Shown one piece after another: positions 3 to 27,334 of a stretch of DNA of 64,000 nt. Position 1 is the first letter of the stretch, and every line of letters begins with the position of its first letter. The stretch lies in the IMG/VR virus record IMGVR_UViG_3300029922_000001, positions 62,001 to 126,000 of that record. One strand, given 5' to 3'. Made by a program: the position numbers and the translations under genes. The notes beneath the pieces were generated by a model, which did not search any database, was not told where the DNA came from, and worked only from the letters and a program-made list of their open reading frames with translations.

Positions 3-1688
3 CGTTTCCCAGAGAACTATAAAAAAGCTAGATATGACTATCTAATTGACTTAATCTATCATGATGATGAATTAGAAGCAGAAGGTGGCGAAATCTCCAA
101 TGAAGAATTAGAACTCCAAAAGCTTCAAGAACGTCACGTTTCAGATAAATTTGCTACTGAAATGGATTTAATTACTAAAGGTGATTTGCTTCCAGAAGTA
201 AAAAAACAAATTTTAGATAAAATTAAAATGCGTAGAAGATTCTTTGAATTAGTTTTAGTTATGGGACGTAGAGGTAGCAAGAGTTTTATTGTTTGTATTA
301 TTGCTCTATACGAAGCTTTTAAACTATTACAAATGGGACATCCACAAAGTAGAATTCCTTCTGCTATTGACTCAACCGTTTTTACTATCTGTAATGTTGC
401 TGTTTCACAAAAACAGGCTGACTCTGCTATTTTCACTCCTTTGTCAAGTTATGTGAACTCTAGTCCATTCTTTACTCAGTGTATTGGTGGTCAAAATAGT
501 CAAGAAATTCACTTATTAACAGAACATGATAAACAAGAAAATGTCCTTAGAAAGAAAAAAGGATTAGATCCTCTAACTGGAACTATTCAAATTATATGCG
601 GACATAGTAACTCGTCTTCATTGGTTGGACGTTCTATGATCGTCGTTATCATTGACGAAATGGCTGAAATGGCTCAAGAAGGTGGGGCTGGTGTTGACTA
701 TGAATTGTACGAAAAACTACTTCCTGCTATCTCAAGCTTTGGTTTGGAATATGGAAAAATGATTAGTATTTCCAACCCATTAGGTCCTCATGGTAAATTG
801 TATGATCTATACAAAGATAGTTTTGATTCTAAAAGCAGTTTAATGTTTCAATTGTCAACTCATGAAGCTAACCCATTCATTCCATTAGACTTCCTTGAAG
901 CGCAAAAAACTAGAAATCCAGTTACTTACGAAATGTTTTATGGAGCTAGGTTTGGAGATGCAGGTAGCTCACCTTGGATACAAGCAGAACATGTGGATAA
1001 AGCCTTTGAAAATGGATATTGTAGAAGTCGCTTAGAAATGGGTGAGCCTGGAGTATCTTATTATGCTCATTTAGATCCCGCTAGAAGTAATGACTATTAC
1101 GCATTAGCCATTGTACATCCTGAAATGACTGGTTATTACAATCCAGATGGTAGCCCTATTAATAAAATAATTGTAGATCATATTCACGTATGGAAGCCTT
1201 TGAATGATCACAAAATAGACAGTAACGAAGTAGATCAATACATCATTAATTTATCTCAAAAAATATTTTTAAAACAAGTTTCTTATGACCAATGGGAAAG
1301 TGAAAACTCAATTAAGAAATTACAAGGTTTCAATATCAATGCTGTATGTACTACGTTTAATCCAGACTACAAACGTTTAGCATATGGAGAATTATATGAA
1401 CTCTTTGTTAGTGGTAGAATTGAATTCTATGGTAAGAACACTATTATAGCACAGCCAAATGGCACAATTATGGAATTAAATGAAATTGATGAAGCTAAAA
1501 AACAATTCAAGTTATTGCAACAAAAATTCCAGGCTAATAAAAGAAAGATTTATACATTACCTAATGCTTTTGATGATATTCCTGACGCCTTAGCTGGTGC
1601 TTGTTATCAGGCATTACAAAAGCAAGTATACCAAACTTCATTTAGACCAAGAGCAGTGTATTTACCATATAGAGGGGGACGCTTCTAA
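3..1688 (+). CDS. terL: Terminase large subunit, 5'-truncated by the window edge
   Basis: Walker A GRRGSKS, Walker B VVIIDE, coupling motif ISISNP, RNase H-like nuclease AHLDPA...DIPDA. The frame is open from position 3 (RFPENYKKARYDY...), so the true start lies upstream of the ORF-track start at 162. Confidence 0.93.
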   Translation, partial: RFPENYKKARYDYLIDLIYHDDELEAEGGEISNEELELQKLQERHVSDKFATEMDLITKGDLLPEVKKQILDKIKMRRRFFELVLVMGRRGSKSFIVCIIALYEAFKLLQMGHPQSRIPSAIDSTVFTICNVAVSQKQADSAIFTPLSSYVNSSPFFTQCIGGQNSQEIHLLTEHDKQENVLRKKKGLDPLTGTIQIICGHSNSSSLVGRSMIVVIIDEMAEMAQEGGAGVDYELYEKLLPAISSFGLEYGKMISISNPLGPHGKLYDLYKDSFDSKSSLMFQLSTHEANPFIPLDFLEAQKTRNPVTYEMFYGARFGDAGSSPWIQAEHVDKAFENGYCRSRLEMGEPGVSYYAHLDPARSNDYYALAIVHPEMTGYYNPDGSPINKIIVDHIHVWKPLNDHKIDSNEVDQYIINLSQKIFLKQVSYDQWESENSIKKLQGFNINAVCTTFNPDYKRLAYGELYELFVSGRIEFYGKNTIIAQPNGTIMELNEIDEAKKQFKLLQQKFQANKRKIYTLPNAFDDIPDALAGACYQALQKQVYQTSFRPRAVYLPYRGGRF

Positions 1689-12607: not shown

Positions 12608-14029
12608 ATGAGAAAAACAGCAGGACACGAAGAAATTATCCACAGTGACACTTTTCCCAGTGCAACAGATAAGTACGATCCATGCGGAGATGATGCTAAA
12701 GATTACGAAACCTTAGAAGGCGAAAATCGTCGTGAGGAATCTTTTGATCATTCTATGGAAAATCAAGGTTGCGAAGGTGAAGGTGGTGCTGAAATAGATG
12801 GTAGTAAATTACTTAACATCTTTGAAAATGCTGTAACTCCTGTTTTTGAAAAATTACTTGATGGTCACGCTGAAGAAGGCGAAACTATTGAAGAAGACGT
12901 GAAACATGGTCCTTCTAGTAGCGTTAAGGTAATGAAGATTGACAATCCTTTAGATGTTTTCGGAAATGATGATTTTGATCATGGTTGTCCAGTTATTCAA
13001 CAATTAGAAAAAAGCTTAGGTGGCGATTTACCAACTAAACTACAGCCTTTATTTGATTGGGATGAAATAAGTGAAGAAGGCGATGAAAATAAAGAAGGTT
13101 TAATGCAATTAGCAAACACCTATAATCAATTTGTCAAACACTTATCTAAACTAGTGGAAGCACAAAAACTTTCTAACTTGAGAATGGCTTATTCTTACTT
13201 AAACAAGACTATTCAAGATCCAACTAATGTCGAAGTTAAATACAAGGCATTAAACAGTTTGAGAACCGCACAAAAGTATAGCAATAATCCAACAGAAATT
13301 GCTATACTTAGCAAAGCAGTTGATGCTGTCTTGAAAGGCACTCCAGAATTTTTAGATGCTGCTAAATACAGAACTCACCAAGTTTTCGCTTCCAATGTTG
13401 TAGCACCTAATATTAGAACAGCTTACACTACATTAGCTACTCAACCTGGTGAAGACTTCCTAATGTGTCCTAAAGGTTTGGATATGTTAGGTTATCCTAT
13501 TGCTATGGAAATTAGCAAGTGTAGAGATAATTGTATTGATAGTAGAGTAAATAGAGAATCAGGTGCAATCACTTGTGGCTATAAAGCTTGGATTAATAAT
13601 GTTGCTGATTCTAATAAGAAAGCAATGGCAAGATTAGATGTTCACAGACACCCAGATAATAAGAATAGCTTATTGTCTCTAAAGGCTGGTGAAAGAGGAC
13701 ATGATGATCCTACAATTACTACCGAAGCATCAATGAAGAAAGCAAAGCTTAACGATTCTAAAGTTTCAGATAAGACCTTAGCTGTTCAATTAGATGAATT
13801 CCATAAAGATGGCGAAAGATTGCAAGATCAAAAAGAAAAGGCAGAAAAGAAGGTTAAAGAATCCGATCTTCATGGTGTTGATGCTAGAAATACCAATAAA
13901 GATTCAGATGATAAAAGCTTCTTTGCTGGAATCGAAAAAAATCACAAAGCATTAACTGACGAAGATGTTAATAGATCACTTAATGCATGGTTAAACAAGC
14001 ATAGAGAAGACAATAAAAAGGGGAAATAA
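12608..14029 (+). CDS. Hypothetical protein with Cys-containing central domain
   Basis: Starts MRKTAG; RMAY, RTAQ, RTAY motifs; CPKG...KCRDNC...TCGYKAW segment. Confidence 0.75.
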   Translation: MRKTAGHEEIIHSDTFPSATDKYDPCGDDAKDYETLEGENRREESFDHSMENQGCEGEGGAEIDGSKLLNIFENAVTPVFEKLLDGHAEEGETIEEDVKHGPSSSVKVMKIDNPLDVFGNDDFDHGCPVIQQLEKSLGGDLPTKLQPLFDWDEISEEGDENKEGLMQLANTYNQFVKHLSKLVEAQKLSNLRMAYSYLNKTIQDPTNVEVKYKALNSLRTAQKYSNNPTEIAILSKAVDAVLKGTPEFLDAAKYRTHQVFASNVVAPNIRTAYTTLATQPGEDFLMCPKGLDMLGYPIAMEISKCRDNCIDSRVNRESGAITCGYKAWINNVADSNKKAMARLDVHRHPDNKNSLLSLKAGERGHDDPTITTEASMKKAKLNDSKVSDKTLAVQLDEFHKDGERLQDQKEKAEKKVKESDLHGVDARNTNKDSDDKSFFAGIEKNHKALTDEDVNRSLNAWLNKHREDNKKGK

Positions 14030-14383
14030 ATGAACAGGAAATTAGTATTACAGAAATTATGCATAGCGGCAAATGAATTAGATGGTCATCAATTCAAAAA
14101 AGAAGTTGATGCTATTACTGTTATTATGAGAAGGGTAGCAGGTATGTATGATGATATTAGTCATGAAGAAAACTGGCATCAAGTTGACCAAAGTCATAAA
14201 GAACCTTTTGACGGCGAAGAAGAAAATGAATTAGATATGCAAAATAATCTCCCTGATGAACGTTCACAATGTGAATTACTAATAAAATGGCTGAAGCTTA
14301 AAGGAATAGAAATTACTAATAAACACATAGCTTATGATAAAGAATTTCTAAGTAAACTTTATCAATCAGTATATTCCTTATAA
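14030..14383 (+). CDS. Hypothetical protein with N-terminal helical tag
   Basis: IAANELDGHQFKKEVDAIT then RRVAG. Confidence 0.7.
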   Translation: MNRKLVLQKLCIAANELDGHQFKKEVDAITVIMRRVAGMYDDISHEENWHQVDQSHKEPFDGEEENELDMQNNLPDERSQCELLIKWLKLKGIEITNKHIAYDKEFLSKLYQSVYSL

Positions 14384-14393
14384 AGATGTAATT

Positions 14394-14828
14394 ATGTGGT
14401 ATAAAAAGGCTTTAGCTCAATCTTCGGGTTTTAGGATTGCATTACAAAATGAACCAGTGCAAACGCTTCAAGACTTAATGCAAGCCTTTCCACAACTTGC
14501 TCAAATGAACACTCAACAAATTGCAGAGTTCATCAGTAAAAATTTAGATGCTAGTACATCACCTACTGATGTTAATAAGTTATTACAACAAGCAACAAAT
14601 GCACCTGATCCTGATAATAGTAGCACGGAATCTAAATTGGATATGGGTTTACACCAACAATATGAAGGTAATACTAATATTAATCCTCATGGTGTTCCAC
14701 AAGATATGAATCCGCAAATTATATGGCAAGGTATGCCTCAATATCAAACAGTAGGCGCACGTATTGAAAATCCTAATCTACCTACAGATAAAACATTTGT
14801 AGGAACCACAATAGGAAGTTCCGTGTAA
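14394..14828 (+). CDS. Hypothetical protein with MWYKKA N-terminus
   Basis: 144 aa, MWYKKALAQ; Gln/Pro/Asn-rich. Confidence 0.7.
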   Translation: MWYKKALAQSSGFRIALQNEPVQTLQDLMQAFPQLAQMNTQQIAEFISKNLDASTSPTDVNKLLQQATNAPDPDNSSTESKLDMGLHQQYEGNTNINPHGVPQDMNPQIIWQGMPQYQTVGARIENPNLPTDKTFVGTTIGSSV

Positions 14829-14850: not shown

Positions 14851-17475
14851 ATGAGTGAAAAAAATATTCCATTAAGGCAAGTTCTGTCCGAGACTGCACA
14901 AAATGTGACAAGAAATGGTAACAAGCAAAAAGTATCTGTTAATGAAGCAATCATTAACAATGCAATGGACGTTATGGTTCCATTTCCTCGTCCTCATGCA
15001 ACTTCCTTTGAAGGTCGTGGTGCTTCTAGAGATCAAGGTTTAACAAGAACAGCCAATAGAATGAATCGTATTGCTTTTGGTGGAATGGGCGGCGGTGGTA
15101 TGGGTGGCGGTATGGGTGGAACTATTTCCACTCCACCACAATTTTATAGACCACAGTTAACCTCTATTGCTTTTAACACTGTTACACAAAGAAAAGAAGT
15201 ATATAACCAAGTTGATTGGTGGTTAAGAAATGAACCTATTATTGCTGCTGCTATTTTATTCTATTCTAGATTTCCCTTTTCTGGTTGGAAATTAGAAGGT
15301 TGCACCAGTTATGTAAAAGAATATTTCGAAAAGTTAATTGCTAAACTAGAGTTTGCTAAATGGCTACCATTAATTGCACAAGAATACTATGCAATGGGAG
15401 ACTGTTTTGTACAAGCTGAAATTAATTGTCCACTTTGTCATGGAAGTATGCAAGATGAATCAGGACAACCATGTAAGCATGAAGGTGCTGTTTGGAAAAA
15501 TCTTTACGTACATGATCCATCTTCTATCGAAGTAAGTAATGCTTATCCTGGTATGCCACCACAATACTACTTAACACCAACAGAAGAAATGAAAAGAGTT
15601 GTTATGGAAAAGCATCCTCGTGAACATTATGAGGCAATTCCAAATAAACTCAAGATGACTATTGCACAAGGTAATCCTATTCCTTTAGATCCTAGTTGTC
15701 TTACACACTTTAAACATTTTGGTAATGCTTATGCACCTTTTGGCAACTCTTTAATTAAGCCACTATTTCCATTGCTTATGTATAAAGATAGATTGCGCCA
15801 AGCACAATGGTTAATTGCAGAGAGGCACATTCTACCCATCAAAATCGTTAAGTTGGGTTCTGATAAGCGTTATGCTGGTGAAGCCGATCTACAGGCAGTA
15901 CAAGAGGAATTAGCAGCAGTTGCTAACGATCCATTCTTGACCTTAGTCGTACCTCATGACTTTGATTTTGAATTTTACGGTGCAACAGGTAAAGTACTTC
16001 AAATTACAGAAGAATTTGGACTTATTGAAAAAGAAATGATCAATGGTTTGATGCTTAACCAAGCTATTCTTAGTGGTGAAGGTCCTTCATACGCTAATGC
16101 TTCTATCGGTTTACTTGTTATGGCAAGACGTTTAGAAGAATTTAGAAATATAGTTGCAGAATGGATTCAAGAAAAATTATTCAAACCTGTTGCTATGTGG
16201 AACGGTTTCGAAGAAGAAGATGATACAGGTACTACTAAATATATTTATCCTAAGATTAAGTTTGATGACTTACAACTTAAAGATAACACTGGAACACTAC
16301 AGATTGTTATGCAATGTGTTGCTCAAGGATTCTTACCAGTACAAACTATTGTTGAAATGTTAGACTTAGATTGGGATACTCAAGTTGAAAGATTACGCTT
16401 TGAACAATCTATCAATATTATGCAAACCCCATCTGTTACTGGTACTGATATGGGAACAGGATTTAGAGGTCCAATGGGTGCGGATATGTCAGGTGGAATG
16501 GCTCAACAAGCTGGATTACCACCATTACCAATGGGTGGAATGGGTGCTGGTGCATCTGGAAATCCTGGTGGTGCTGGTGGCGGTGGTGCTTTGCCAGGTC
16601 AAGGAAACATCCCAGCAGTAGCTACAATACATTCACCTTGGGCTAGAGTTGCACAAGAAGTTCCTGAAGCTTACAGAATCGCACAAGATTTAACACGTCA
16701 CATTTATAACGAATACAATTTCTCTCAAGTTGATCAAACTAGTAGAGATAAAGGTAGTTATTCTTTGGTTAGAACCGCAGAAGAAAGTATTGGTATGTAC
16801 CGTAAAGCACATGCTATTACTAAAGAAGTATTTATGGAAGCATTAGATAATCCTAGATACAAGCGTAAGGCATCTAGAATCAAGAGTGCGGCTCATGCTA
16901 AGTTCTTAGAAACAGTTCGCCCTATTACTGGTAGAGGTTTCGATAAGCAACTATTACCTGAAAATGAAGTTTACTTTGTTGATTTTGGTAATTTTGTAGG
17001 AACTGGCGTACCAATGAACCGTCTCGCTATTAGAGATTACTTCTTTGATGATTCAGTACAAGAAATTGATGGCGTCAGAGTTGTAACTGCTCAAAGAAAG
17101 CCACAAGTTAATTTGCCTAAAGAGTACTTTACCAGTATCGAACAAGCACTTTACAATATCGTACTTGAAGCTGGTATTCCTTATGCATTTTATGCACAAT
17201 TTGCGGCTGGACCTGATGGTAAATACAAGATTGATGGTGCTTTCCCAGCAATTAAATTAGGGTTTGAAGCTGACTCAGAATCTTTCCACTCTCATGATGA
17301 TCAAATTGCTAGAGATAGACAAAGGGATCAAGAGTTAATGTCTCAAGGTTGGACAATTATGAGATTTACAGATCACGACATTAAACAAAAAGATAAAGAG
17401 GTACTTCGTGTTATCCAAGAAGTTGCATCAAAAATCATGGGACAATCCAGTAACTCCAATACTATCCAACTTTAA
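14851..17475 (+). CDS. Portal protein with C-terminal DUF559-like endonuclease domain
   Basis: Portal-like segments NEPIIAAAILFYSRFP, YAPFGNSLIKPLF..L..KDRLRQAQ, PIKIVKLG, IINGL-like region; position between terL and protease. C-terminus YKIDGAFPAIKLGFEADSESFH..RDRQRDQELMSQGWTIMRF is DUF559-like. Confidence 0.82.
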   Translation: MSEKNIPLRQVLSETAQNVTRNGNKQKVSVNEAIINNAMDVMVPFPRPHATSFEGRGASRDQGLTRTANRMNRIAFGGMGGGGMGGGMGGTISTPPQFYRPQLTSIAFNTVTQRKEVYNQVDWWLRNEPIIAAAILFYSRFPFSGWKLEGCTSYVKEYFEKLIAKLEFAKWLPLIAQEYYAMGDCFVQAEINCPLCHGSMQDESGQPCKHEGAVWKNLYVHDPSSIEVSNAYPGMPPQYYLTPTEEMKRVVMEKHPREHYEAIPNKLKMTIAQGNPIPLDPSCLTHFKHFGNAYAPFGNSLIKPLFPLLMYKDRLRQAQWLIAERHILPIKIVKLGSDKRYAGEADLQAVQEELAAVANDPFLTLVVPHDFDFEFYGATGKVLQITEEFGLIEKEMINGLMLNQAILSGEGPSYANASIGLLVMARRLEEFRNIVAEWIQEKLFKPVAMWNGFEEEDDTGTTKYIYPKIKFDDLQLKDNTGTLQIVMQCVAQGFLPVQTIVEMLDLDWDTQVERLRFEQSINIMQTPSVTGTDMGTGFRGPMGADMSGGMAQQAGLPPLPMGGMGAGASGNPGGAGGGGALPGQGNIPAVATIHSPWARVAQEVPEAYRIAQDLTRHIYNEYNFSQVDQTSRDKGSYSLVRTAEESIGMYRKAHAITKEVFMEALDNPRYKRKASRIKSAAHAKFLETVRPITGRGFDKQLLPENEVYFVDFGNFVGTGVPMNRLAIRDYFFDDSVQEIDGVRVVTAQRKPQVNLPKEYFTSIEQALYNIVLEAGIPYAFYAQFAAGPDGKYKIDGAFPAIKLGFEADSESFHSHDDQIARDRQRDQELMSQGWTIMRFTDHDIKQKDKEVLRVIQEVASKIMGQSSNSNTIQL

Positions 17476-17497
17476 TAAGTTGGATAGATTGCCTGGA

Positions 17498-18124
17498 ATG
17501 CAATTAGGTCATTATTTCAAAGAAAATTATTACTTTATTGAATATAATGCCTTGCCAGAAAACTTATTACTACAAAAAAATAAGTTTCACACTAATTTAC
17601 TTCAAGCTGTTGACTGCATAGAGTCTAACAATAAATATTATGTTGTGTATCCTTTTATTCAAAACAAATACGATTTGATGAAATTGGAATATAATGATAA
17701 ATACACAAAAATAAAACAAATTGTTGATGTTATTAGAGTATTGCACGATGAAAATTTAATTCATGGAGATATACAGCGTAGAAACATCTTAATTGATGAA
17801 GATATACATTTGATTGATCTAGAAACACTGTCCATTAATGACACAATTAGTACTCAGTTTTTAAAAGTACCAGAATTGGTTTATGGTGGGAATTTAAATA
17901 AGCAAACTGACATTTACATGCTCTGTTTATTAATTTACGAAGTTTTAAACGAAAGTGTTATACCAATATTAAAAACCCCATTAGCTTCTATATGCTATTA
18001 CAACACGCTCCAACCTGTCCGCAACAGGTTAAATAAAACACTTTTCGATGTTATCCAAACAGGTTTATCTCCAAACCCCTTAGAACGTAAAGTGGATGTT
18101 CAAGAAATTTATAATTCTTTTTAG
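17498..18124 (+). CDS. Ser/Thr protein kinase-like protein with short N-lobe
   Basis: HGDIQRRNILID catalytic loop, IDLE in place of DFG, VPE, TDIYML..LIYE, LSPNPLER; no Gly-rich loop visible. Start uncertain (17408-17498). Confidence 0.7.
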   Translation: MQLGHYFKENYYFIEYNALPENLLLQKNKFHTNLLQAVDCIESNNKYYVVYPFIQNKYDLMKLEYNDKYTKIKQIVDVIRVLHDENLIHGDIQRRNILIDEDIHLIDLETLSINDTISTQFLKVPELVYGGNLNKQTDIYMLCLLIYEVLNESVIPILKTPLASICYYNTLQPVRNRLNKTLFDVIQTGLSPNPLERKVDVQEIYNSF

Positions 18125-18165: not shown

Positions 18166-18232
18166 AGGTGAAATATATGTGGTTTTTCAAAAAATCATTT
18201 CTGAGCATCGTTTAAGGGAGCCAAAAGAAAAC

Positions 18233-21200
18233 ATGATACGCAAAGGAATATCAGGCGGTGTAATAGGTTTAAACAATTTAATTTGTTTGAACAAAAAAGA
18301 AGCAAACGCAATTAAGGCTAGAATCTTAACGGCATCTAGTTTGCGTGAAAGTGCCCGTATCGGTTTGCAACGTTTGTATGCAGACCCCGAAGATGCACTA
18401 AAGAAATATAAAGGAACCGAATTTGACATCGCCAACGAAATGCTTGAACGTCGTGGCATGAAATTACTATGGGTTAGATGTAGAGCTATTGACGCTAACG
18501 TAGTAAATGCTAATGGTGATTACTTCTCTACTAAAGAGTTATTGAAAGAAACCATACACAATGGCAAAAAAGTTCCAGCCTATAAAACATTTGAAGGCGT
18601 ACCAATTTATACCAATCATGAAAATGATGACATTGAAAAAGCAAAAGGTACTGTAGTTTATGCAGAGTGGGACGAAAAGGAAGAAGCGGTTTATTGTGTA
18701 TTTTACATAGACGAAGAAGCTTATCCCGAAATTGCTCATGCTATTCGTGGTGGAATTATGCACGACGTTAGTATGGGTTGTTTTATTCCAGGTACTAGAG
18801 TATTAACTAATTCAGGATATAAGAATATTGAAAATGTAAATATAAACGATTTACTTTTAGATAAAGATGGTAATTTTACCACTATAGTTAATAGACAAAT
18901 TAAAATTAAAAACGAAGATATTTTTGACATTAAATTTAATGGCGGCTTAACCATTAGTGCAACAAAAGAACATCCTCATTTTGTATTTAAAAAAGATGTA
19001 TGGAAATCTAGAAAAACTAGAAATAAACCAGGCAAAGGAAAAGAACGATGGTCTTATAAAGATATTGGAGAGCCAATTGAAATTACTTCTGAAAACTTAG
19101 AAGTTGGTGACGTGCTAGTAACACCTATTAATCAGGTTGAATTAAATCCTGATAATATAACTCCTGATTTCGCTAGATTATTAGGTTATTTTTTGGCTGA
19201 AGGAAATTTTCTTAAATACAATGATTCTATTAAAGAATTAGAGCTTACTTTTGGTCTTCACGAAAAATATACATTAGTTCAAGAATTTATTACACTTTTT
19301 TCAAAAGAATTTCCAAATTCTACAATTAGAGTATATGATCGTATACCTAACAATAATTGTGTTATTAGAGTATATGACACTGAAATAGCTAATTTATTTT
19401 ACAAATATTGCGGAGAATATTCTGATAGTAAAAAACTAGATTCATCATTAATGTTCCTTCCTAAAAATATTCAATTAGAATTAATCAAAGGGTATTTTAA
19501 TGGTGACGGTTGTATTCATCGTGCTAAAGATCGTGTTATTGGATTAAGCGCATCTTCTTGTTCTTTGGATTTAGTAGAACAAATCTCAATGATATTATTT
19601 AGAAATGGAATTTATCACAAGAAAAATGGAAGAATTAATGGGAAATATATTGAATATACCAAATCTAAAGAAGCATGGAAGCAGAAAGGTGATTTTAGGA
19701 AAACATATTATGAAATTTCTATTCCTCAAGCTTATTGTCCTCAATTGTTAAATGAAACTAGATTTGATTTTCAACCCAACTTACGACAAGATAATTTTCA
19801 TTATGGTAATTGGATAATTCATCCAATTAAAAACATAATCAAAAGACACTATGAAGGATTAGTATATAATTTTGAAACAGAAAGCCATACATATATGGTT
19901 GAGAATTTTGCTACTCATAATTGCGCGGTTCAATCTGGTAATTGTTCAATTTGTGGCAAAGAAGCAGTTAAGGAAGATGATTACTGTAGTCACATGAAGA
20001 ATTACAAGGGTAAGAAATTCCCTGGAACTGGCGAAATTGCTTACGAAAAGAATAAAGATATTAAGTTTATTGAAATCTCTATTGTTGCAGATGGTGCTTT
20101 TGATTCTTGTATGATTAAAGAAATTTACGAACAAGAAGAAATTGAAAATGCTGCTTCACAATTAAGACATAAGACTGCAAGTGTACAAGCAAACATTCTA
20201 TTAGCTGAAAACAATCTTCCAGAAGACATGCTTGAAAGAAGAAAGAGTGAAGAATTCTTACGTGCTATCAATAATTGTAATATTGAAATCTTTAGATTCG
20301 CTGAAAAATTAGGACACACAACTAGAATAGCTCAAGAAGCTGGAACATTAGTTGGTGGACAAATGGGTGGTGGACAAATAGGACAAAACGCTACAGTTAA
20401 TACACTAATGCAATTACTAGGTATTGATCCTACTACTGGATTAAATATCTTAGACATGTTGAACTTAGCTCTTAACTTCTTAGAAGTTGCAGTTATGGAA
20501 TTACTTTCTAAGAGTAGTTCAGTTAAGCTTGAGTACGTTAACAAGGTGACTAAAGCTATGACAGATTTACAAGATGTTATGGAAGACGTTATTAATGACG
20601 GTGTTGATGTTGCACAACAACCACAAGGTGTTCAATTACAAGGTGGTCCAGTTTCACAACAGCAACCAGTACCAGGACAGCAACCACAAGGACAACAACA
20701 ACAAACTCAAGTACCAGGTCAAGGACAACCAGGACAGGTACAACAGCAAGCAAATGTTATGCCAATGGCTTATCAACCAGCAGTTGGTCAGGTAACAGGT
20801 CCTATGTTTGGCGCTTTACCTGGTGTTACAGCTACATCAAGTAATAGAAAATTAGTATGGGCATCACATGATGACGATGATGTTCGTGAGGTTTTTGCCT
20901 CTAGCAATAGAGGTACCAGTGTAAAGAAAGTTAAATCTTTCGATGAAGCTTTAACTCACATTGGAGAAGTAGTTATCAAACTAGCAAGTGCAGTTGGTGT
21001 TGCTGACGATTCATCACTAAAAGCACTCAATTTTAAAATTAAAAAGAATCAAGAACAAAGCAAATCGACTCAACCCGGAGGAAACAATATGGAAAACAAC
21101 ATCTTCAACGAAATGGCGCAAAGACATCGTTTGCGCAACGCATCCAAACTCTCTATTGATGCAGTGTTTACAGACCACTCAAATAGATATAGTGTAGCCA

Positions 21201-23788
21201 TCTCAACAGATGGAACTGTCAAAGCGTCTGTAGACAACAAGCGTGTTGCTTGGGATTGTAGATTGAACGATACTCAAATCGAACGTCTTCAAAACAATGA
21301 CATTGCTCCTGTAGGTAACGAAATTCTAGATACATTTGTTGGTTTTGTTAAAACCGCAGAAACAGAAGGACGTAAAATTCTTGCATACGAAAAGCCAAAA
21401 ACTGTTACTAACATTTTCGAAGTTAGCTTAGAAGGTGAAAGAACTGGTACTGATGATGATGTTAGAGAAAACACTATCAAACCATTAAGAACCGGTGTTG
21501 AAGACGAAACTCAAGAAGTTAAACTTGAAAAGTATCGTACAGGCGTTAAAGAAGATGTTAGAGAAAATCTACTAGCAGATGAAGCTGGTTTATATGCACG
21601 TCGTAACGAAGAACGTGATATTGCAGAAGTTCTTTTGGAAGATGCTCGTGTTGGAGTTAATGAAGAAGTATTAGAAAATAAGCTTAATCATCACCGTGCC
21701 CAAGAAAGCAGTGTTGAAACACATGAAGCTGTTGCTAAAGTTCTAAGTGGTTTTGGTAATGCTGTACTAGCATCTAAGAATACTCCAGATGAAGTAGTTA
21801 CTGCCGCTATTGAATTAGCTAAGAAAGACAACTTCAATGAATTATTGGTAGTTGCTGCTGCTGGAACACAAACTAGAACAAAAGTTGCTTCTAGATATGC
21901 TTTCCACAACAAACCACTTCCTACACTATCTGCTTCTGCCGCTGTTCTTAATGAATTAGGTAAGGTAATCGTTAGTGGAGTTTCTGCTGTTGATGTTGCT
22001 CAAATTGTTAGAGAAGCAAGTGCAAATAAAGATCATGCTGTTAAAGCAGCATATATTGATGCTAAAGGTAAAATGGGAGAAGACTTCTCATTCGACGCTT
22101 ATTATTCTCAAAGAGAAGCAAGTAAAACAGACGCTATTCGTGTCGCGTTAGCTAGTTTATCAGGCGATGCAAATGATAACATTTCAGGTGTTGAACAAGT
22201 TAAAACAGCTTTGGCTGCTATGGCAAAAACAACTGTTGCTATCAAAGTTACACCAAAGGAAATTCTTACAGTATTAGCTAGTGTTGATGCTAAGCAATTA
22301 TCCAAGGACTTAACAGTTGCAAGAGATGCTAAAGAAGTTAAAGCAAGAAATGATTTACGTGAAAGAGTTGCCTTCTTTGAAGGTGCAAACATCCGTATCG
22401 CTAGTGAAGTAGACATCTACAATACTATCGTAGGTTACTTAGCTGACTATGCCAACAAAGATAAGTTCAATACATCTTCTATCGTAGAAGCTATTGGTAG
22501 AGTTGTAGACAAACCTCGTTATGCTGAGAAATATGTTTCTCGTTTAGCTTTCTCAAGTATTAGAGAAGCTGAAGCTACTATTACAGAAGACACAAACATC
22601 ACTCGTCGTCTTCAATGTACATTGGGTGAATTAGGATTAGACGCTAAAGATGAAAACTTTGACGACATGTTAAAGCAAAAAGTTGCTGAACTATTCGTTC
22701 AAAGAGGATATCCTATTGATCCAAACAACTTTAATCTAACTGATGTTATGATTACTGCTGAAGGTGCATGTACAGCAACTATTAGTACACGTTCAACAAA
22801 GACATTCAAAGTTGATCCTAGTGAATCTGGTGAAGATGAAAATGTAATCTCAGTAGATGGCGCTCCTACTCCTTTTGAACCAGAAGCACAACCTACAGAG
22901 GGTGAAGGCGTTCCTCTTGTTCCTACAGATATGTCTCTACCTCCGACAGATCCAAACGAACAACCAACTATCATGACTGCTGGTGCAATTGCTCTTAGAA
23001 AAGCTAAGAGAGAAAATCTATTAAGATTAGCTCAAATGCCAGGTGGCGGTGGTGGTGGAATGCCAGGTGCTGGCGGTGGAATGCCAGGTGGTGCTGGTGC
23101 TGCTGGTGCTGCTGGCGCACCTGATTTATCTGGTGCTGGTGACGGTCCTGGTGTTGGTGCATTAACCAATCCTCCTGATGGTGGATTAGATGATATGGGT
23201 GGAAGTGATCAAGCTACTGAAAACAAGGATTCTATGCCTACTCCTGGTAAGCAACTTCCTTGGGGTTCAATCTGTCCTGCCTGTGGTTCTGCTAGTGTTT
23301 CATTAGTAGACGGTAAAGGTAGCTGTGCTGATTGTAAAGCTGAAATCACATATGAATTCAAAGCAACAGTTATTCCTGGTAGCAAGAAGAATGAAGAAGC
23401 TCCTACAGATGAAATGTCTATGGACATTCCAGGCTTAGGAACCTTGCCAGGTGCTGAAGCTGGTGCAAATGGTGCAACCCCTCCTGCTGGTGGCGCACCA
23501 GGAATGGGCGGTGCTGCTCCTGCTGGTGGACAAGCTCTACTACAAGCACAAGCTTCTTGGTTAGCTGATAGTCGTACTTTTGTTAGAACAGCACAAGCTG
23601 ACTTTAACAAAGCTACAGAACAAGTTCTACCTCCTGGTTTCATCTGTCCTGGTTGTGCAAACAGAGAAGTTAATAAACTTGGATCTCAAACATTCTGTTA
23701 CGCTTGTAAGACAATAAGTAAGAGTCAAATTATAGCTTCCAGAATCCCTGGAAAGGTTATAGCTAGAGTCACTTGGGTTCTTAAATAA
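18233..23788 (+). CDS. Prohead (maturation) serine protease fused to a long scaffold-like region; intein-containing
   Basis: NANGDYF, IYTNH (putative catalytic His), DVSMG (putative catalytic Ser), CSICG..CSH, FIEISIVADGA fit HK97-type prohead proteases; AAGGGAG SD favours start 18233 over GTG 18179. Confidence 0.85.
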   Translation: MIRKGISGGVIGLNNLICLNKKEANAIKARILTASSLRESARIGLQRLYADPEDALKKYKGTEFDIANEMLERRGMKLLWVRCRAIDANVVNANGDYFSTKELLKETIHNGKKVPAYKTFEGVPIYTNHENDDIEKAKGTVVYAEWDEKEEAVYCVFYIDEEAYPEIAHAIRGGIMHDVSMGCFIPGTRVLTNSGYKNIENVNINDLLLDKDGNFTTIVNRQIKIKNEDIFDIKFNGGLTISATKEHPHFVFKKDVWKSRKTRNKPGKGKERWSYKDIGEPIEITSENLEVGDVLVTPINQVELNPDNITPDFARLLGYFLAEGNFLKYNDSIKELELTFGLHEKYTLVQEFITLFSKEFPNSTIRVYDRIPNNNCVIRVYDTEIANLFYKYCGEYSDSKKLDSSLMFLPKNIQLELIKGYFNGDGCIHRAKDRVIGLSASSCSLDLVEQISMILFRNGIYHKKNGRINGKYIEYTKSKEAWKQKGDFRKTYYEISIPQAYCPQLLNETRFDFQPNLRQDNFHYGNWIIHPIKNIIKRHYEGLVYNFETESHTYMVENFATHNCAVQSGNCSICGKEAVKEDDYCSHMKNYKGKKFPGTGEIAYEKNKDIKFIEISIVADGAFDSCMIKEIYEQEEIENAASQLRHKTASVQANILLAENNLPEDMLERRKSEEFLRAINNCNIEIFRFAEKLGHTTRIAQEAGTLVGGQMGGGQIGQNATVNTLMQLLGIDPTTGLNILDMLNLALNFLEVAVMELLSKSSSVKLEYVNKVTKAMTDLQDVMEDVINDGVDVAQQPQGVQLQGGPVSQQQPVPGQQPQGQQQQTQVPGQGQPGQVQQQANVMPMAYQPAVGQVTGPMFGALPGVTATSSNRKLVWASHDDDDVREVFASSNRGTSVKKVKSFDEALTHIGEVVIKLASAVGVADDSSLKALNFKIKKNQEQSKSTQPGGNNMENNIFNEMAQRHRLRNASKLSIDAVFTDHSNRYSVAISTDGTVKASVDNKRVAWDCRLNDTQIERLQNNDIAPVGNEILDTFVGFVKTAETEGRKILAYEKPKTVTNIFEVSLEGERTGTDDDVRENTIKPLRTGVEDETQEVKLEKYRTGVKEDVRENLLADEAGLYARRNEERDIAEVLLEDARVGVNEEVLENKLNHHRAQESSVETHEAVAKVLSGFGNAVLASKNTPDEVVTAAIELAKKDNFNELLVVAAAGTQTRTKVASRYAFHNKPLPTLSASAAVLNELGKVIVSGVSAVDVAQIVREASANKDHAVKAAYIDAKGKMGEDFSFDAYYSQREASKTDAIRVALASLSGDANDNISGVEQVKTALAAMAKTTVAIKVTPKEILTVLASVDAKQLSKDLTVARDAKEVKARNDLRERVAFFEGANIRIASEVDIYNTIVGYLADYANKDKFNTSSIVEAIGRVVDKPRYAEKYVSRLAFSSIREAEATITEDTNITRRLQCTLGELGLDAKDENFDDMLKQKVAELFVQRGYPIDPNNFNLTDVMITAEGACTATISTRSTKTFKVDPSESGEDENVISVDGAPTPFEPEAQPTEGEGVPLVPTDMSLPPTDPNEQPTIMTAGAIALRKAKRENLLRLAQMPGGGGGGMPGAGGGMPGGAGAAGAAGAPDLSGAGDGPGVGALTNPPDGGLDDMGGSDQATENKDSMPTPGKQLPWGSICPACGSASVSLVDGKGSCADCKAEITYEFKATVIPGSKKNEEAPTDEMSMDIPGLGTLPGAEAGANGATPPAGGAPGMGGAAPAGGQALLQAQASWLADSRTFVRTAQADFNKATEQVLPPGFICPGCANREVNKLGSQTFCYACKTISKSQIIASRIPGKVIARVTWVLK
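18779..19921 (+). mobile_element. Intein with LAGLIDADG homing endonuclease (381 aa)
   Basis: N-terminal CFIPGTRVLT, block B SATKEHP, LAGLIDADG motifs LLGYFLAEG and IKGYFNGDG, C-terminal VYNFETESHTY...THN followed by +1 Cys; visibly more AT-rich than its flanks. Confidence 0.95.
21440..21698 (+). repeat. About five degenerate ~16-aa repeats (R-T/V-G-x-[DE]..E..L) in the protease extension
   Basis: RTGTDDDVRENTIKPL / RTGVEDETQEVKLEKY / RTGVKEDVRENLL / RRNEERDIAEVLLEDA / RVGVNEEVLENKLNHH. Confidence 0.7.
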
Positions 23789-26464: not shown

Positions 26465-27334
26465 ATGTCATCAATGATTAGAAATAATAAAGCATATAAT
26501 GAACAAAGAGAAGCCATCATTGCAATGGCAGTGGAAACACCTGATGGTCGTTCCGCTCTTGCTGGAGCTATGGTAGACCCTATCAAGAACGCTCTTAACT
26601 ACCAAGGCGTTATCCGTAAATTAATTATGGTAGACGAACTACCTCAAGGTGCTTACCCTCGCTACGAAAGAGATATTACAGTCAAAAGCTGGATCATCGG
26701 TAATCGTGCTGGTGTACCTGTTAGCGTTATCGAAGGCGAAGACTTATTTATCCCTACAGTCGAATTAGCAGCATTGCCTACAATTCGTCTCCAAGAGGTG
26801 AAAAGCAGGAGATATTACATAGTAGATCGTGCCCAAGTTAAGGCTAAGGACTCTCTACAACGTCAAGAAGATACTCTAGGATTTGAAGTTATCAACGCTG
26901 CTGTTCCAACAGAACAGTCAATTACAGTAGTTGGACAATTGCAACCTGAGAACCTTAACCACGCTTTAACACTTATTGAAGAACATGAATTGGTCGGAGC
27001 AAAGATAGTCCTTCCTCCTTCACGTTACAAAGATATTAGAGGCTTTGGTAAGGAATTCTTTGATGAAGCAACTCAAAGAGATATCTTAATGACAGGACTT
27101 TATGGACACATTTACTCTGCGGACATCCACGTAAGTACTATGGTTCCTAAGAACTGTGTGTATATCATGGCTCCTGCCCAATTCGTTGGTGCAATGCCTA
27201 TTCGTCAAGACGTTACAGTTATCCCTGCTGACGATCCTCGCAAGCTTCGCTTGGGTTGGGTAGTCTACGAAGATATCGGTATTGGCGTCATCAACGACTA
27301 TTCTTTGGCTCGTATTCAAGTAACTGTTTCCTAA
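26465..27334 (+). CDS. Major capsid protein (HK97 fold)
   Basis: AGGAG SD, strong terminator downstream; ALAGAMVDPIKNALNYQGVIRKL, VDELPQG, VDRAQ..A...QRQED, GLYGHIYSADI, GWVVYE pattern of large-phage capsids. Confidence 0.85.
   Translation: MSSMIRNNKAYNEQREAIIAMAVETPDGRSALAGAMVDPIKNALNYQGVIRKLIMVDELPQGAYPRYERDITVKSWIIGNRAGVPVSVIEGEDLFIPTVELAALPTIRLQEVKSRRYYIVDRAQVKAKDSLQRQEDTLGFEVINAAVPTEQSITVVGQLQPENLNHALTLIEEHELVGAKIVLPPSRYKDIRGFGKEFFDEATQRDILMTGLYGHIYSADIHVSTMVPKNCVYIMAPAQFVGAMPIRQDVTVIPADDPRKLRLGWVVYEDIGIGVINDYSLARIQVTVS

What the first reader, a model, noticed from the sequence alone, without database searches (positions are those of the whole stretch)
17078..17475. Portal fused to a DUF559/Vsr-like endonuclease behind a putative cleavage site
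Seen: after the portal core, a Gly-rich linker and several RxA motifs, the ORF ends in YKIDGAFPAIKLGFEADSESFH..RDRQRDQELMSQGWTIMRF, directly preceded by RVVTAQ. The usual E-x-D-G reads EADS. Established: DUF559 belongs to the PD-(D/E)XK nuclease superfamily. Inference: a dodecameric portal would bring 12 nuclease domains to the packaging vertex, acting in DNA end processing or released inside the head for injection. A fused homing endonuclease is the alternative.
Basis: partly seen in the sequence, partly recalled or inferred. Interest (0 to 1): 0.72.

Follow-up and report, generated by a model that had tools for sequence, protein, structure and literature searches.

The report
Phage portal carrying a tethered nuclease
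The DNA-entry ring (portal) of an uncultivated ~440-kb peat phage ends in a long floppy tether carrying an intact DNA-cutting domain; hundreds of related huge phages share this design, which probably puts twelve nucleases inside every virus head.

Summary
ORF 14851-17475 (874 aa) is a portal protein: residues 109-526 have the portal fold, 527-608 are a disordered Gly/Pro/Ala/Met tether, and 609-731 are a basic helical module. The C-terminus (about 732-866) is a Vsr/DUF559-type PD-(D/E)XK nuclease. All six active-site residues of the Vsr / I-Bth0305I ('EDxHD') type are present and kept in at least 116 of 120 homologues. The fusion is not an artefact. Independent peat samples carry the same sequence. 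At least 215 IMG/VR loci encode relatives, and most 50%-identity cluster representatives carry the fusion. The tether is never shorter than 87 aa. Core and nuclease co-evolve (Mantel r = 0.92), which rules out a homing endonuclease. About ten relatives have an intein lodged exactly inside the catalytic E-x-D motif. Phage G, the nearest cultivated relative, has the Gly-rich tail but no nuclease. The proposed cleavage site RVVTAQ is not conserved and lies in a predicted strand of the nuclease fold, so it is not supported. TerL keeps its own nuclease motifs. Portal C-termini face the capsid interior, so I read this as a portal-tethered, encapsidated endonuclease. Most likely the adjacent prohead protease frees it and it is delivered with the DNA. 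In-head DNA processing is the main rival. Neither function has been tested.

The parts
14851..17475 (+). Whole ORF: portal protein with C-terminal nuclease (874 aa plus stop)
   Evidence: ORF list; Pfam Portal_Mu plus DUF559; PHROG portal; identical in a 116-kb contig and in contig pieces from three further peat samples, with no indels
14851..15174 (+). N-terminal region (residues 1-108), mostly disordered, with a Gly/Met-rich run at about 77-90
   Evidence: pLDDT below 50 for residues 19-108 in the full-length AF2 model; sequence
15175..16428 (+). Portal core (residues 109-526), ending in the crown helices 480-525
   Evidence: AF2 pLDDT mostly above 80; Foldseek against PDB gives 113 hits at E<=0.001, and the top 50 are all phage portal proteins with TM by target 0.42-0.60; 27% identity to phage G portal gp14 over residues 96-519
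15427..15480 (+). Cys-x2-Cys ... Cys-x-His knuckle inside the portal core (C193, C196, C208, H210), a probable zinc site
   Evidence: C193, C196 and C208 are nearly invariant and H210 is invariant in 48 aligned homologues; metal binding is inferred
16429..16674 (+). Disordered Gly/Ala/Pro/Met-rich tether (residues 527-608)
   Evidence: pLDDT below 50. In 214 homologues the spacer from core to nuclease is 87-235 aa (median 136), and its first 70 aa are 38% Gly, 13% Pro, 12% Ala and 10% Met
16675..17043 (+). Basic, mainly helical middle module (residues 609-731; pI 9.6 for 640-757), present only in the nearer relatives
   Evidence: Confident helices in the C-terminal AF2 model. Distant relatives replace it with a short Lys-rich stretch. 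pI. No fold or feature match
17044..17448 (+). Vsr/DUF559 ('EDxHD'-type) PD-(D/E)XK nuclease domain (residues 732-866), including the N-terminal beta-hairpin that contains RVVTAQ (743-748)
   Evidence: AF2 pLDDT 83-97 for model blocks 121-270 = residues 718-867 (model mean 81.8, pTM 0.77); 3r3p TM 0.80, 3hrl 0.70, Vsr 0.54-0.56; AFDB DUF559 proteins align from model residue about 136; Pfam DUF559
17140..17142 (+). E764, equivalent to Vsr E25 / I-Bth0305I E170
   Evidence: 119 of 120 homologues; residue mapping from the 3r3p alignment and PMC3239194
17233..17235 (+). D795, equivalent to the metal-binding Vsr D51 / I-Bth0305I D196
   Evidence: 119 of 120; mapping
17266..17274 (+). E806-A807-D808 catalytic E-x-D motif (Vsr F62/H64 positions; I-Bth0305I E206/N208)
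   Evidence: E in 116 of 120 and D in 120 of 120. In about 10 relatives a canonical intein (Cys...His-Asn|Cys) is inserted exactly between E806 and residue 807
17287..17289 (+). H813, equivalent to the general base Vsr H69 / I-Bth0305I H213
   Evidence: 120 of 120; mapping
17314..17316 (+). D822, equivalent to Vsr D97 / I-Bth0305I D222
   Evidence: 117 of 120; mapping
162..1688 (+). Context: large terminase with its own nuclease-type acidic motifs
   Evidence: PHROG 2 TerL E 1.9e-26 over residues 27-488; tblastn aligns residues 25-431 to annotated TerLs; Walker A/B and the HLDPA, SYDQW and DDIPDAL motifs read by eye
18179..23788 (+). Context: 1869-aa ORF starting with a head-maturation protease interrupted by an intein (18779-19921)
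   Evidence: PHROG 18299 'head maturation protease' E 1.7e-18; Pfam LAGLIDADG_3 plus Hint; intein boundaries; the same portal -> giant ORF -> MCP synteny in relatives
26465..27334 (+). Context: major head protein
   Evidence: PHROG 2522 E 1.6e-65

Best explanation
SHOWN: the gene encodes the portal of a ~441-kb uncultivated huge phage from peat. After the crown helices the chain continues as a disordered Gly/Pro/Ala/Met tether of about 80 residues, then a basic helical module, and ends in a complete Vsr/DUF559 ('EDxHD'-type) PD-(D/E)XK endonuclease domain. All six active-site residues (E764, D795, E806, D808, H813, D822) are intact. The fusion is an ancestral, vertically inherited, single-copy character of a large clade of 300-500-kb environmental phages from peat, fresh water, sea and soil, and no complete member is seen to have lost it. 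The nearest nuclease-less portals, including phage G, already have the Gly-rich tail, so the nuclease was added to an existing flexible tail. INFERRED from established portal structures: the C-terminus leaves the crown on the capsid-interior side, so up to 12 nuclease domains hang inside the head at the inner mouth of the DNA channel. MOST LIKELY MECHANISM (inference, about 45%): the portal acts as an encapsidation handle that loads a fixed dose of a DNA-cutting enzyme into every procapsid. The prohead protease encoded next door then cuts somewhere in the tether or middle module, as protease I removes the last ~124 residues of the related Mu portal. The freed nuclease leaves with the DNA at infection and cuts host or competitor DNA, or processes the incoming genome. 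The acidic catalytic domain and a separate basic module suggest weak, regulated DNA binding that spares the co-packaged genome. Identity and architecture carry about 0.95 confidence. The confidence given below is for the delivered-cargo mechanism.
For: Identity and fold. Catalytic residues conserved in 116-120 of 120 homologues at roughly 40% overall identity, mapped onto Vsr / I-Bth0305I residues through and PMC3239194. An intein sits exactly inside the E-x-D motif in about 10 relatives, as inteins typically sit in constrained functional motifs. Fusion is real and old: all 120 best homologues carry PF04480; 110 of 142 further 50%-identity representatives have it, and the rest are truncated fragments or distant portals of 33% identity or less; 215 IMG/VR loci encode relatives; 10 of 10 large genomes have one copy in a 767-877-aa frame; contigs from independent samples are identical. 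Co-inheritance: Mantel r = 0.92, with 0 of 999 permutations reaching it. Tether always at least 87 aa. A protease gene lies next to the portal in this window and a corresponding giant ORF follows the portal in relatives. Precedent for C-terminal trimming in a Portal_Mu-family portal: PMC11915804. Precedent for head-packaged toxin or nuclease cargo attached to the portal vertex (MuF fusions): PMC3482391. TerL keeps its own nuclease motifs, so the packaging cuts do not need this domain. The interior location of portal C-termini is established structural knowledge. From memory, and not checked here, engineered T4 gp20 C-terminal GFP fusions end up protease-protected inside heads (Baumann, Mullaney and Black 2006).
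Against: No proteomic or structural data exist for any member, so neither cleavage nor presence of the domain in virions is shown. Delivered effectors are usually variable and often lost. This domain is never lost and evolves only slightly faster than the portal core (mean p-distance 0.54 against 0.46), which fits a housekeeping morphogenetic role at least as well. No thymidylate-synthase-family hydroxymethylase, N6/N4 methyltransferase or C5 methyltransferase was found in the genome. Protection of the phage's own DNA by those modifications is therefore unsupported, and another form of control would be needed. Nuclease activity itself is untested.
Confidence: 0.45

Rival explanations
1. The nuclease stays tethered to the portal and works inside or at the head during morphogenesis. 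It would process DNA at the inner mouth of the channel, for example trimming or nicking the entering or last-packaged end, clearing aberrant DNA structures, or completing the head. This would be a covalent version of the portal-associated nucleases of T4.
For: The domain is universal, never lost and single-copy, and its substitution rate is close to that of the portal core. This is what an essential assembly function would show. The tether is always long (at least 87 aa) and older than the nuclease. That fits a permanent leash better than a bare cleavage site. Vsr-type enzymes are structure-specific nickases (PMC3239194), which would be harmless to intact packaged duplex. T4 precedents are the portal-bound gp49 endonuclease VII, which frees stalled branched DNA (PMC9958956), and gp4, a REase-fold head-completion nuclease (PMC7824862). 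No methylase or hydroxymethylase was found for self-protection.
Against: The C-terminus emerges on the capsid-interior side, while branches stall and the terminase cuts on the outside. During packaging the channel is occupied by DNA. The idea that the domain replaces a missing junction resolvase is not supported: RuvC is absent in 10 of 10 genomes, but 5 of 10 have RusA-like ORFs, one has endonuclease VII, and this genome has a sub-threshold endonuclease VII-like ORF. There is no direct data.
Confidence: 0.3
2. The domain no longer cuts DNA. It serves as a DNA-binding or structural module, such as a clamp or valve for the DNA end, or a contact for scaffold or inner-body proteins.
For: The domain is acidic (pI 5.1 in the query, family median 5.7), and it sits beside packaged DNA, where an active nuclease looks dangerous. 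Some PD-(D/E)XK domains are known to be non-catalytic (general knowledge).
Against: All six residues of the Vsr/EDxHD active site are kept in 116-120 of 120 homologues across about 60% sequence divergence. A purely structural role would not require this. Inteins target the E-x-D motif.
Confidence: 0.07
3. The portal nuclease supplies the packaging cuts (initiation or headful termination) because the terminase has lost its own nuclease.
For: Pfam detects only the ATPase half of TerL, and below threshold. Terminase_6C is not found in the genome.
Against: TerL (508 aa) matches the PHROG TerL profile over residues 27-488 and aligns to annotated TerLs to residue 431. It shows the three acidic nuclease-type motifs HLDPA, SYDQW and DDIPDAL (read by eye). 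The portal C-terminus is on the wrong side of the portal for the headful cut.
Confidence: 0.03
4. A selfish homing endonuclease gene has fused to the end of the portal gene.
For: The closest solved structure is the catalytic domain of the phage homing endonuclease I-Bth0305I. This gene family is full of inteins with their own homing endonucleases.
Against: Core and nuclease distances correlate at r = 0.92. The domain sits at the same position in every complete member, with one copy per genome. There is no sporadic distribution and no NUMOD/HTH module by Pfam. The domain is itself a host for inteins.
Confidence: 0.03
5. Frameshift or assembly artefact joining two genes.
For: The Gly-rich linker is low-complexity DNA in which indels occur. 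One NCBI MAG homologue (P0126) is split there by a frameshift.
Against: That example runs the other way: there the fused frame is the intact one and the error splits it. In this window a 116-kb contig and pieces from three other peat samples agree base for base with no indels, and hundreds of independent assemblies have the single ORF.
Confidence: 0.01

Closest known systems
I-Bth0305I and the 'EDxHD' Vsr-like homing endonucleases (PDB 3R3P; PMC3239194)
   Same: Best structural match of the C-terminal domain (TM 0.80 by target) and a profile match at E 1.2e-6. It has the same catalytic set E, D, H, D plus the extra acidic residue at the Vsr F62 position. The order is also the same: a DNA-binding or basic module first, then the catalytic domain.
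   Different: I-Bth0305I is a free intron-encoded selfish enzyme with NUMOD DNA-binding repeats and a sporadic distribution. Here the domain is a fixed, co-evolving C-terminal part of an essential structural protein, with no NUMOD match.
DUF559 (PF04480; solved example NGO0050, PDB 3HRL) and E. coli Vsr (1VSR/1CW0)
   Same: The Pfam score is above the family cut-off, the profile E-value to 3hrl is 3.4e-12, and the fold matches.
   Different: DUF559 proteins are small stand-alone bacterial proteins, or fused to helicase or antitoxin-like domains, and their function is unknown. Vsr has a zinc site and mismatch-intercalating residues. The nuclease domain here has no cysteines and no Pfam Vsr hit at E<=1.
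Bacteriophage Mu portal gp29 (Portal_Mu family)
   Same: Same Pfam portal family. [quoted passage not shown] This is a precedent for a disposable portal C-terminal extension.
   Different: The Mu extension is not known to be an enzyme. Cleavage is not shown for the present protein.
MuF / SPP1 gp7-type head proteins fused to toxin domains (polymorphic toxins 'packaged into the phage head'; PMC3482391)
   Same: An enzymatic or toxic C-terminal domain, nucleases included, is attached to a portal-vertex protein so that it is encapsidated and delivered.
   Different: Those use the MuF domain, for which no Pfam match was found here. They are polymorphic, with variable toxin tips. Here a single domain type is fixed across the whole clade and is fused to the portal itself.
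T4 portal-associated nucleases: gp49 endonuclease VII bound to gp20, and gp4 head-completion nuclease
   Same: Nucleases that act physically at the portal vertex during packaging or head completion (PMC9958956; PMC7824862). gp4 also has the restriction-endonuclease fold.
   Different: They are separate polypeptides acting from the outer side of the portal. Here the link is covalent and comes from the interior end of the portal. The families also differ (HNH-like endonuclease VII; TnsA-like gp4).
Bacillus phage G portal gp14 (nearest cultivated relative)
   Same: 27% identity over the portal core, a huge ~498-kb genome, and a C-terminal Gly/Pro-rich disordered tail of about 130 aa.
   Different: Phage G has no DUF559 domain in the portal or anywhere else in its genome, and the next gene, gp15, is unrelated. 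Phage G encodes a RuvC, which the fusion clade lacks.

Membership tests
Phage portal protein (Pfam Portal_Mu PF06074; PHROG 16240) | Profile match above the curated threshold | tested here: met
   46.3 bits against a cut-off of 23.9; PHROG 16240 E 1.3e-37
Phage portal protein (Pfam Portal_Mu PF06074; PHROG 16240) | Portal fold (clip, stem, wing, crown) | tested here: met
   The full-length AF2 model gives 113 PDB hits at E<=0.001. The top 50 are all portal chains with TM by target 0.42-0.60
Phage portal protein (Pfam Portal_Mu PF06074; PHROG 16240) | Position in a head-morphogenesis module (terminase, protease, major capsid protein) | tested here: met
   TerL at 162-1688, protease at 18179-, MCP at 26465-27334; the portal -> giant ORF -> MCP-sized ORF order is kept in relatives
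Phage portal protein (Pfam Portal_Mu PF06074; PHROG 16240) | Dodecameric ring at one capsid vertex | not testable with these tools
   Inferred from family membership only
DUF559 (PF04480) | Profile match above the gathering score | tested here: met
   33.6 bits (whole protein) and 38.0 bits (domain) against a cut-off of 20.6; 37.8 bits in the genome scan
DUF559 (PF04480) | Fold of a solved member (3HRL) | tested here: met
   Profile E 3.4e-12; Foldseek TM 0.70 by target
MTES_1575 REase (PF18741) | Profile match above the gathering score | tested here: not met
   33.2-37.2 bits against a cut-off of 38.2: a related family, just under threshold
Vsr / 'EDxHD' catalytic type of PD-(D/E)XK nucleases | Catalytic residues equivalent to Vsr E25, D51, H64-position, H69 and D97 | tested here: met
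   E764, D795, D808, H813 and D822, plus E806, are present and 97-100% conserved in 120 homologues. Mapping comes from the 3r3p alignment and PMC3239194
Vsr / 'EDxHD' catalytic type of PD-(D/E)XK nucleases | Metal-dependent DNA strand cleavage | not testable with these tools
   Needs a biochemical assay
Vsr mismatch endonuclease proper (PF03852) | Vsr profile match, zinc site, T:G mismatch recognition | tested here: not met
   No Pfam Vsr hit at E<=1; TM only 0.54-0.56; no cysteines in the domain. Mismatch specificity was not tested
Homing endonuclease (EDxHD lineage) | Sporadic, mobile distribution; residence in an intron or intein, or free-standing; NUMOD-type DNA-binding region | tested here: not met
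   Fixed position, one copy per genome, co-evolves with the portal at r = 0.92; no NUMOD/HTH Pfam match
MuF-type head-packaged polymorphic toxins | MuF (Phage_Mu_F) domain N-terminal to a variable toxin tip | tested here: not met
   No MuF match in Pfam at E<=1. The C-terminal domain is the same in all relatives, not polymorphic
Prohead-protease substrate (cleaved portal, as in Mu gp29) | Proteolytic removal of the C-terminal extension during head maturation | not testable with these tools
   A protease gene is adjacent. No conserved site was identified, and RVVTAQ is not conserved and lies inside a predicted strand

The most novel reading that the evidence does not exclude
The tethered nuclease is an obligatory working part of the huge-phage head. 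In this reading, a ring of up to twelve active, structure- or end-specific endonucleases at the inner mouth of the portal cuts or nicks the phage's own DNA from inside the capsid. It might define or process a genome end, release an anchored end to license ejection, or destroy mis-packaged DNA. That would add a second, portal-borne nuclease activity to the classical terminase-only model of DNA packaging in tailed phages.
Probability: 0.15. Interest if true: 0.88.

Novelty: new variant of a known kind. Interest (0 to 1): 0.68.

Why it matters
Portal proteins are regarded as passive or sensing rings, and I know of no characterised portal with an enzymatic domain. None turned up in nine full-text searches. 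Here an apparently active endonuclease is a fixed part of the portal. This holds across a widespread clade of 300-500-kb phages from peat, lakes, soil and the ocean (Tara), and the ESM Atlas cluster alone has 524 members. None of these phages is cultivated, and none matches any deposited phage genome in this region. If the domain is delivered cargo, it is a new and very economical way to dose an enzyme into every virion and into every infected cell. If it works inside the head, it changes the parts list of the DNA packaging and ejection machine. Either way it gives a concrete, testable handle on the biology of uncultivated huge phages. It also offers a natural template for loading proteins into capsids through the portal C-terminus. 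The Vsr-like domain is small, about 110-135 aa. PMC3239194 notes that such domains are of interest as compact nuclease modules.

Tried and rejected
1. Fusion as artefact: rejected. The one 'split' homologue, P0126, is itself a frameshift in the Gly-rich linker.

2. RVVTAQ or RxA as a cleavage site. The alignment shows RVVTAQ only in the closest 3-4 sequences, and the AF2 models put it in a confident beta-strand. Only Y-[KR]-x-A (608-611) and R-x-A-[SG] (671-674) are semi-conserved. No protease specificity could be derived.

3. Split gene in phage G. gp15 is unrelated to the C-terminal module, and there is no DUF559 in phage G or three other outgroup phages.

4. tblastn of the C-terminal 277 aa against 50,697 deposited phage genomes found no match.

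5. 'Replaces a missing Holliday-junction resolvase'. RuvC, RecU and Hjc are each absent in 10 of 10 clade genomes, and T7 endonuclease I is never above the cut-off. But RusA-like ORFs occur in 5 of 10, endonuclease VII in 1 of 10, and this genome has a sub-threshold endonuclease VII-like ORF. The idea is not supported.

6. 'Replaces a lost terminase nuclease'. TerL looks complete. A phmmer search of TerL against PDB gave nothing useful.

7. Self-protection by DNA modification. No thymidylate-synthase-family enzyme, N6/N4 methyltransferase or C5 methyltransferase was found. Only three families were tested, so this is not exhaustive.

8. Homodimer prediction for residues 750-874: 'no answer', score 0.00. 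This is no evidence either way on nicking versus double-strand cutting.

9. Function of the middle module 598-757. The ESM Atlas feature search gave only weak hits (0.55 or less), and no fold match appeared outside the nuclease part.

10. The search for related loci with the C-terminal alignment alone failed for lack of a conserved stretch. It worked with the full-length alignment.

11. Literature. No paper in the held library links a portal protein with DUF559/Vsr. Dixit et al. 2011 could not be read.


Full report
WHAT IS THERE. The window is bases 62001-126000 of a 441,498-bp virus record that CheckV rates as complete. Matching reads come from peat metagenomes. ORF 14851-17475 (+) encodes 874 aa. 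It matches Pfam Portal_Mu at residues 271-494 (E 4.8e-12) and PHROG 16240 'portal protein' (E 1.3e-37). It also matches DUF559 (PF04480) at 789-858, with 33.6 bits in the whole protein and 38.0 bits for the isolated C-terminus against a cut-off of 20.6. The related family MTES_1575 scores just under its cut-off. The gene lies in a head module: TerL at 162-1688, a head-maturation protease at the start of the 1869-aa ORF 18179-23788, and the major head protein at 26465-27334. The in-frame start of the flagged stretch is 17077, not 17078.

ANATOMY. Two AlphaFold2 models were built on alignments of 48 homologues.
- Full-length model: a disordered N-terminus (19-108), a confident portal core (109-526) ending in crown helices, a disordered Gly/Ala/Pro/Met stretch (527-608), and a folded C-terminal module.
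- The core retrieves only portal structures from the PDB: 113 hits at E<=0.001, and the top 50 are all portals.
- C-terminal model, residues 598-874: mean pLDDT 81.8, pTM 0.77. It shows basic helices (about 643-731), then a beta-hairpin (732-749), then an alpha/beta domain ending near residue 866.
- Foldseek places that domain on the catalytic domain of the phage homing endonuclease I-Bth0305I (3r3p, TM 0.80 by target), on the DUF559 protein NGO0050 (3hrl, 0.70) and on E. coli Vsr (0.54-0.56).
- AlphaFold DB and viral-protein hits are DUF559 proteins. Several align from the hairpin onward.
- A sequence profile of the module finds 3hrl at E 3.4e-12 and 3r3p at E 1.2e-6.

IS THE NUCLEASE LIKELY TO BE ACTIVE? 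The I-Bth0305I paper lists the shared Vsr-type active site: Vsr E25, D51, H64, H69 and D97 correspond to I-Bth0305I E170, D196, N208, H213 and D222, with an extra conserved acidic residue at the Vsr F62 position (PMC3239194). Through the 3r3p alignment these map to E764, D795, D808, H813, D822 and E806.
- Among 120 homologues with about 33-76% overall identity to the query, these six residues are kept in 119, 119, 120, 120, 117 and 116 sequences.
- About ten cluster representatives carry a canonical intein (Cys-Leu-His/Leu/Pro-Pro ... His/Lys-Asn | Cys) exactly between E806 and residue 807, inside the catalytic E-x-D motif. Inteins characteristically occupy the most constrained functional motifs of their host proteins.

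Taken together this argues for a working active site. Activity itself is untested.

IS THE FUSION REAL, AND HOW OLD IS IT? A 116-kb contig covers 15800-18300 with no differences. Short contigs from three other peat samples also tile the stretch without mismatches or indels, but those pieces are 151-918 bp with gaps (for example 17232-17387 in one sample). Evidence from relatives:
- All 120 best hits in the 5.8-billion-protein collection carry PF04480, and most also carry PF06074.
- In the 50%-identity representative library, 276 proteins match below 1e-30. Of 142 additional representatives, 110 have the nuclease at their C-terminus.
- The 32 without it are C-terminally truncated fragments or distant portals of about 500-600 aa and 33% identity or less.
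- One apparent exception, P0126, is a frameshift inside the Gly-rich linker, and the DUF559 ORF follows it directly.
- IMG/VR holds 215 loci encoding relatives, and the match runs to query residues about 855-874 wherever the contig allows.
- Ten clade genomes of 300-499 kb each have exactly one above-threshold DUF559 match, in a 767-877-aa frame.
- Relatives come from peat, lake, soil and marine samples, including a 487-kb Tara scaffold, and keep the same synteny: portal, giant ORF, ~580 aa, ~220 aa, MCP-sized ORF.
- Pairwise distances of the portal core and the nuclease domain correlate at r = 0.92, with 0 of 999 permutations as high.

So the two parts have been inherited together. This rules out a mobile homing endonuclease and an artefact.

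THE TETHER AND THE OUTGROUP. In 214 fusion proteins the spacer between core and nuclease is 87-235 aa (median 136). Its first 70 residues are 38% Gly, 13% Pro, 12% Ala and 10% Met. The basic helical middle module exists only in the nearer relatives. Distant ones go from the Gly-rich stretch through a short Lys-rich segment straight into the nuclease. Phage G, the nearest cultivated relative (27% identity over the core), has a 648-aa portal ending in a Gly/Pro-rich tail of about 130 aa with no nuclease. It has no DUF559 anywhere in its genome. Three further outgroup phages also lack DUF559. Distant nuclease-less portals from metagenomes end in Gly-rich tails too. The flexible tail therefore predates the nuclease, which was added at its end in the ancestor of this clade. 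No deposited phage genome matches the C-terminal 277 aa.

THE PROPOSED CLEAVAGE SITE. RVVTAQ (743-748) occurs only in the three or four closest relatives and falls in gapped, unconserved columns. It is predicted with high confidence to be one strand of the hairpin that belongs to the nuclease module. Of six RxA motifs between residues 599 and 726, only two positions are semi-conserved. I could not derive a protease specificity. Cleavage as such remains plausible. The prohead protease gene is adjacent. In the related Mu portal, the last ~124 residues are missing from virions and are attributed to protease I (PMC11915804). If a cut occurs, the disordered tether or the middle module is the likelier place.

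WHERE THE DOMAIN SITS AND WHAT IT MIGHT DO. In all solved portals with a crown, the C-terminal crown faces the capsid interior. This is established knowledge, and the crown helices here are residues 480-525. The tether therefore starts at the inner mouth of the channel, and the twelve nuclease modules should lie inside the head. TerL appears complete: its profile match spans residues 27-488, it aligns to annotated TerLs to residue 431, and it has Walker A/B motifs and three acidic nuclease-type motifs. So the packaging cuts do not need the portal domain.

I tested whether the domain could stand in for a missing junction resolvase, by analogy with T4 endonuclease VII bound to the portal (PMC9958956).
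- RuvC is absent from all ten clade genomes, whereas phage G has one.
- RecU and Hjc are absent, and T7 endonuclease I is never above the cut-off.
- But five genomes have RusA-like ORFs, one has endonuclease VII, and this genome has a sub-threshold endonuclease VII-like ORF.

That idea is therefore not supported. In addition, no hydroxymethylase-type enzyme and no N6/N4 or C5 methyltransferase was found in the genome. Modification-based protection of the phage's own DNA is unsupported, although only three families were tested. The catalytic domain is acidic (pI 5.1) and the preceding module is basic (pI 9.6). This suggests that DNA binding is delegated to a separate, variable module, as in I-Bth0305I.

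VERDICT ON MECHANISM. Shown:
- a conserved portal-nuclease fusion that appears catalytically intact;
- a long flexible tether;
- vertical inheritance through a large clade of uncultivated huge phages.

Inferred: interior location and twelve copies per virion.

My preferred reading (about 45%) is that the portal serves as an encapsidation handle. The nuclease would be freed by the prohead protease and leave with the DNA to act in the infected cell. The closest parallels are MuF-toxin fusions 'packaged into the phage head' (PMC3482391) and T4 internal proteins. The main rival (about 30%) is a permanently tethered enzyme that processes DNA in the head, akin in spirit to T4 gp49 and gp4. The complete absence of loss and the near-core evolutionary rate favour such a housekeeping role. 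The interior topology and the intact TerL argue against roles at the terminase side. Lesser rivals are a non-catalytic clamp (about 7%), replacement of the TerL nuclease (about 3%), a homing endonuclease (about 3%) and an artefact (about 1%).

NOVELTY. Both domains belong to known families, and automatic pipelines already label these proteins 'very-short-patch-repair endonuclease'. However, nine full-text searches found no description of a portal-nuclease fusion. A broad comparative survey of jumbo phages mentions none (PMC7824862). I rate it a new variant of a known kind: a portal with an appended, conserved enzymatic domain. It is restricted so far to uncultivated huge phages. Interest is moderately high because the architecture is widespread, clean and directly testable, while its function is still open.

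Noticed in passing
window 18779-19921 (within ORF 18179-23788): A 381-aa intein with a LAGLIDADG homing endonuclease interrupts the head-maturation protease directly after the motif HDVSMG. It starts with Cys, and ends ...THN followed by Cys. That motif looks like the protease's catalytic serine region.
   Followed up: partly
window 18179-23788: The protease is the N-terminus of a 1869-aa ORF. It contains long Gly/Met/Pro/Ala low-complexity stretches like those in the portal, repeated R-[TV]-G-[VT]-x-[ED]-[ED]-like motifs, and C-terminal Cys-x2-Cys pairs. It is probably a protease-scaffold or internal-protein polyprotein. Giant ORFs of 1469-1939 aa follow the portal in relatives as well.
   Followed up: partly
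window 17408-18124 (probable ATG start at 17498): A Ser/Thr protein-kinase-like gene (Pfam Pkinase E 6.5e-13; PHROG 2361) lies between portal and protease. The listed GTG start overlaps the portal end by 68 nt. GC drops to 27-31% here against about 37% in the neighbours. Relatives lack a gene at this position with any Pfam hit on record, so it looks like a recent insertion.
   Followed up: partly
window 15427-15480 (portal residues 193-210): A Cys-x2-Cys ... Cys-x-His knuckle inside the portal core is nearly invariant across the family. It is probably a zinc site, which would be unusual for a portal.
   Followed up: no
homologues P0128-P0230: The portal genes of this clade are heavily colonised by inteins. 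Many representatives are 1100-3003 aa with 3-5 matched stretches, and the breaks recur near query residues ~120-138, ~379 and ~416 and inside the nuclease E-x-D motif.
   Followed up: partly
L006:5480-5640 (NCBI MAG contig JAWVHC010001365.1): A homologous portal is split into a 522-aa and a 260-aa ORF by a frameshift in the GGN-rich linker next to a G-run. This is probably a sequencing or assembly indel, and it shows that this linker is error-prone in assemblies.
   Followed up: yes
G000:C1:204458-204625 (-), outside the window: A sub-threshold endonuclease VII-like (PF02945, 19.3 bits) match lies in a 241-aa ORF. It is the only junction-resolvase candidate found in this genome. RuvC and RusA were not found.
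   Followed up: partly
window 162-1688: The large terminase is so divergent that Pfam detects only a sub-threshold ATPase match and phmmer finds no PDB match. Yet Walker A/B and the three acidic nuclease motifs are readable by eye.
   Followed up: partly
window 12608-14828: Three ORFs directly upstream of the portal (473, 117 and 144 aa) have no significant Pfam match (none, none, and only E>=0.02). PHROGs, run on the 473-, 117- and 144-aa ORFs, also found nothing. ORFs of similar sizes (~480-570 aa and ~110-150 aa) precede the portal in relatives, so they may be conserved head-module genes of unknown role.
   Followed up: no
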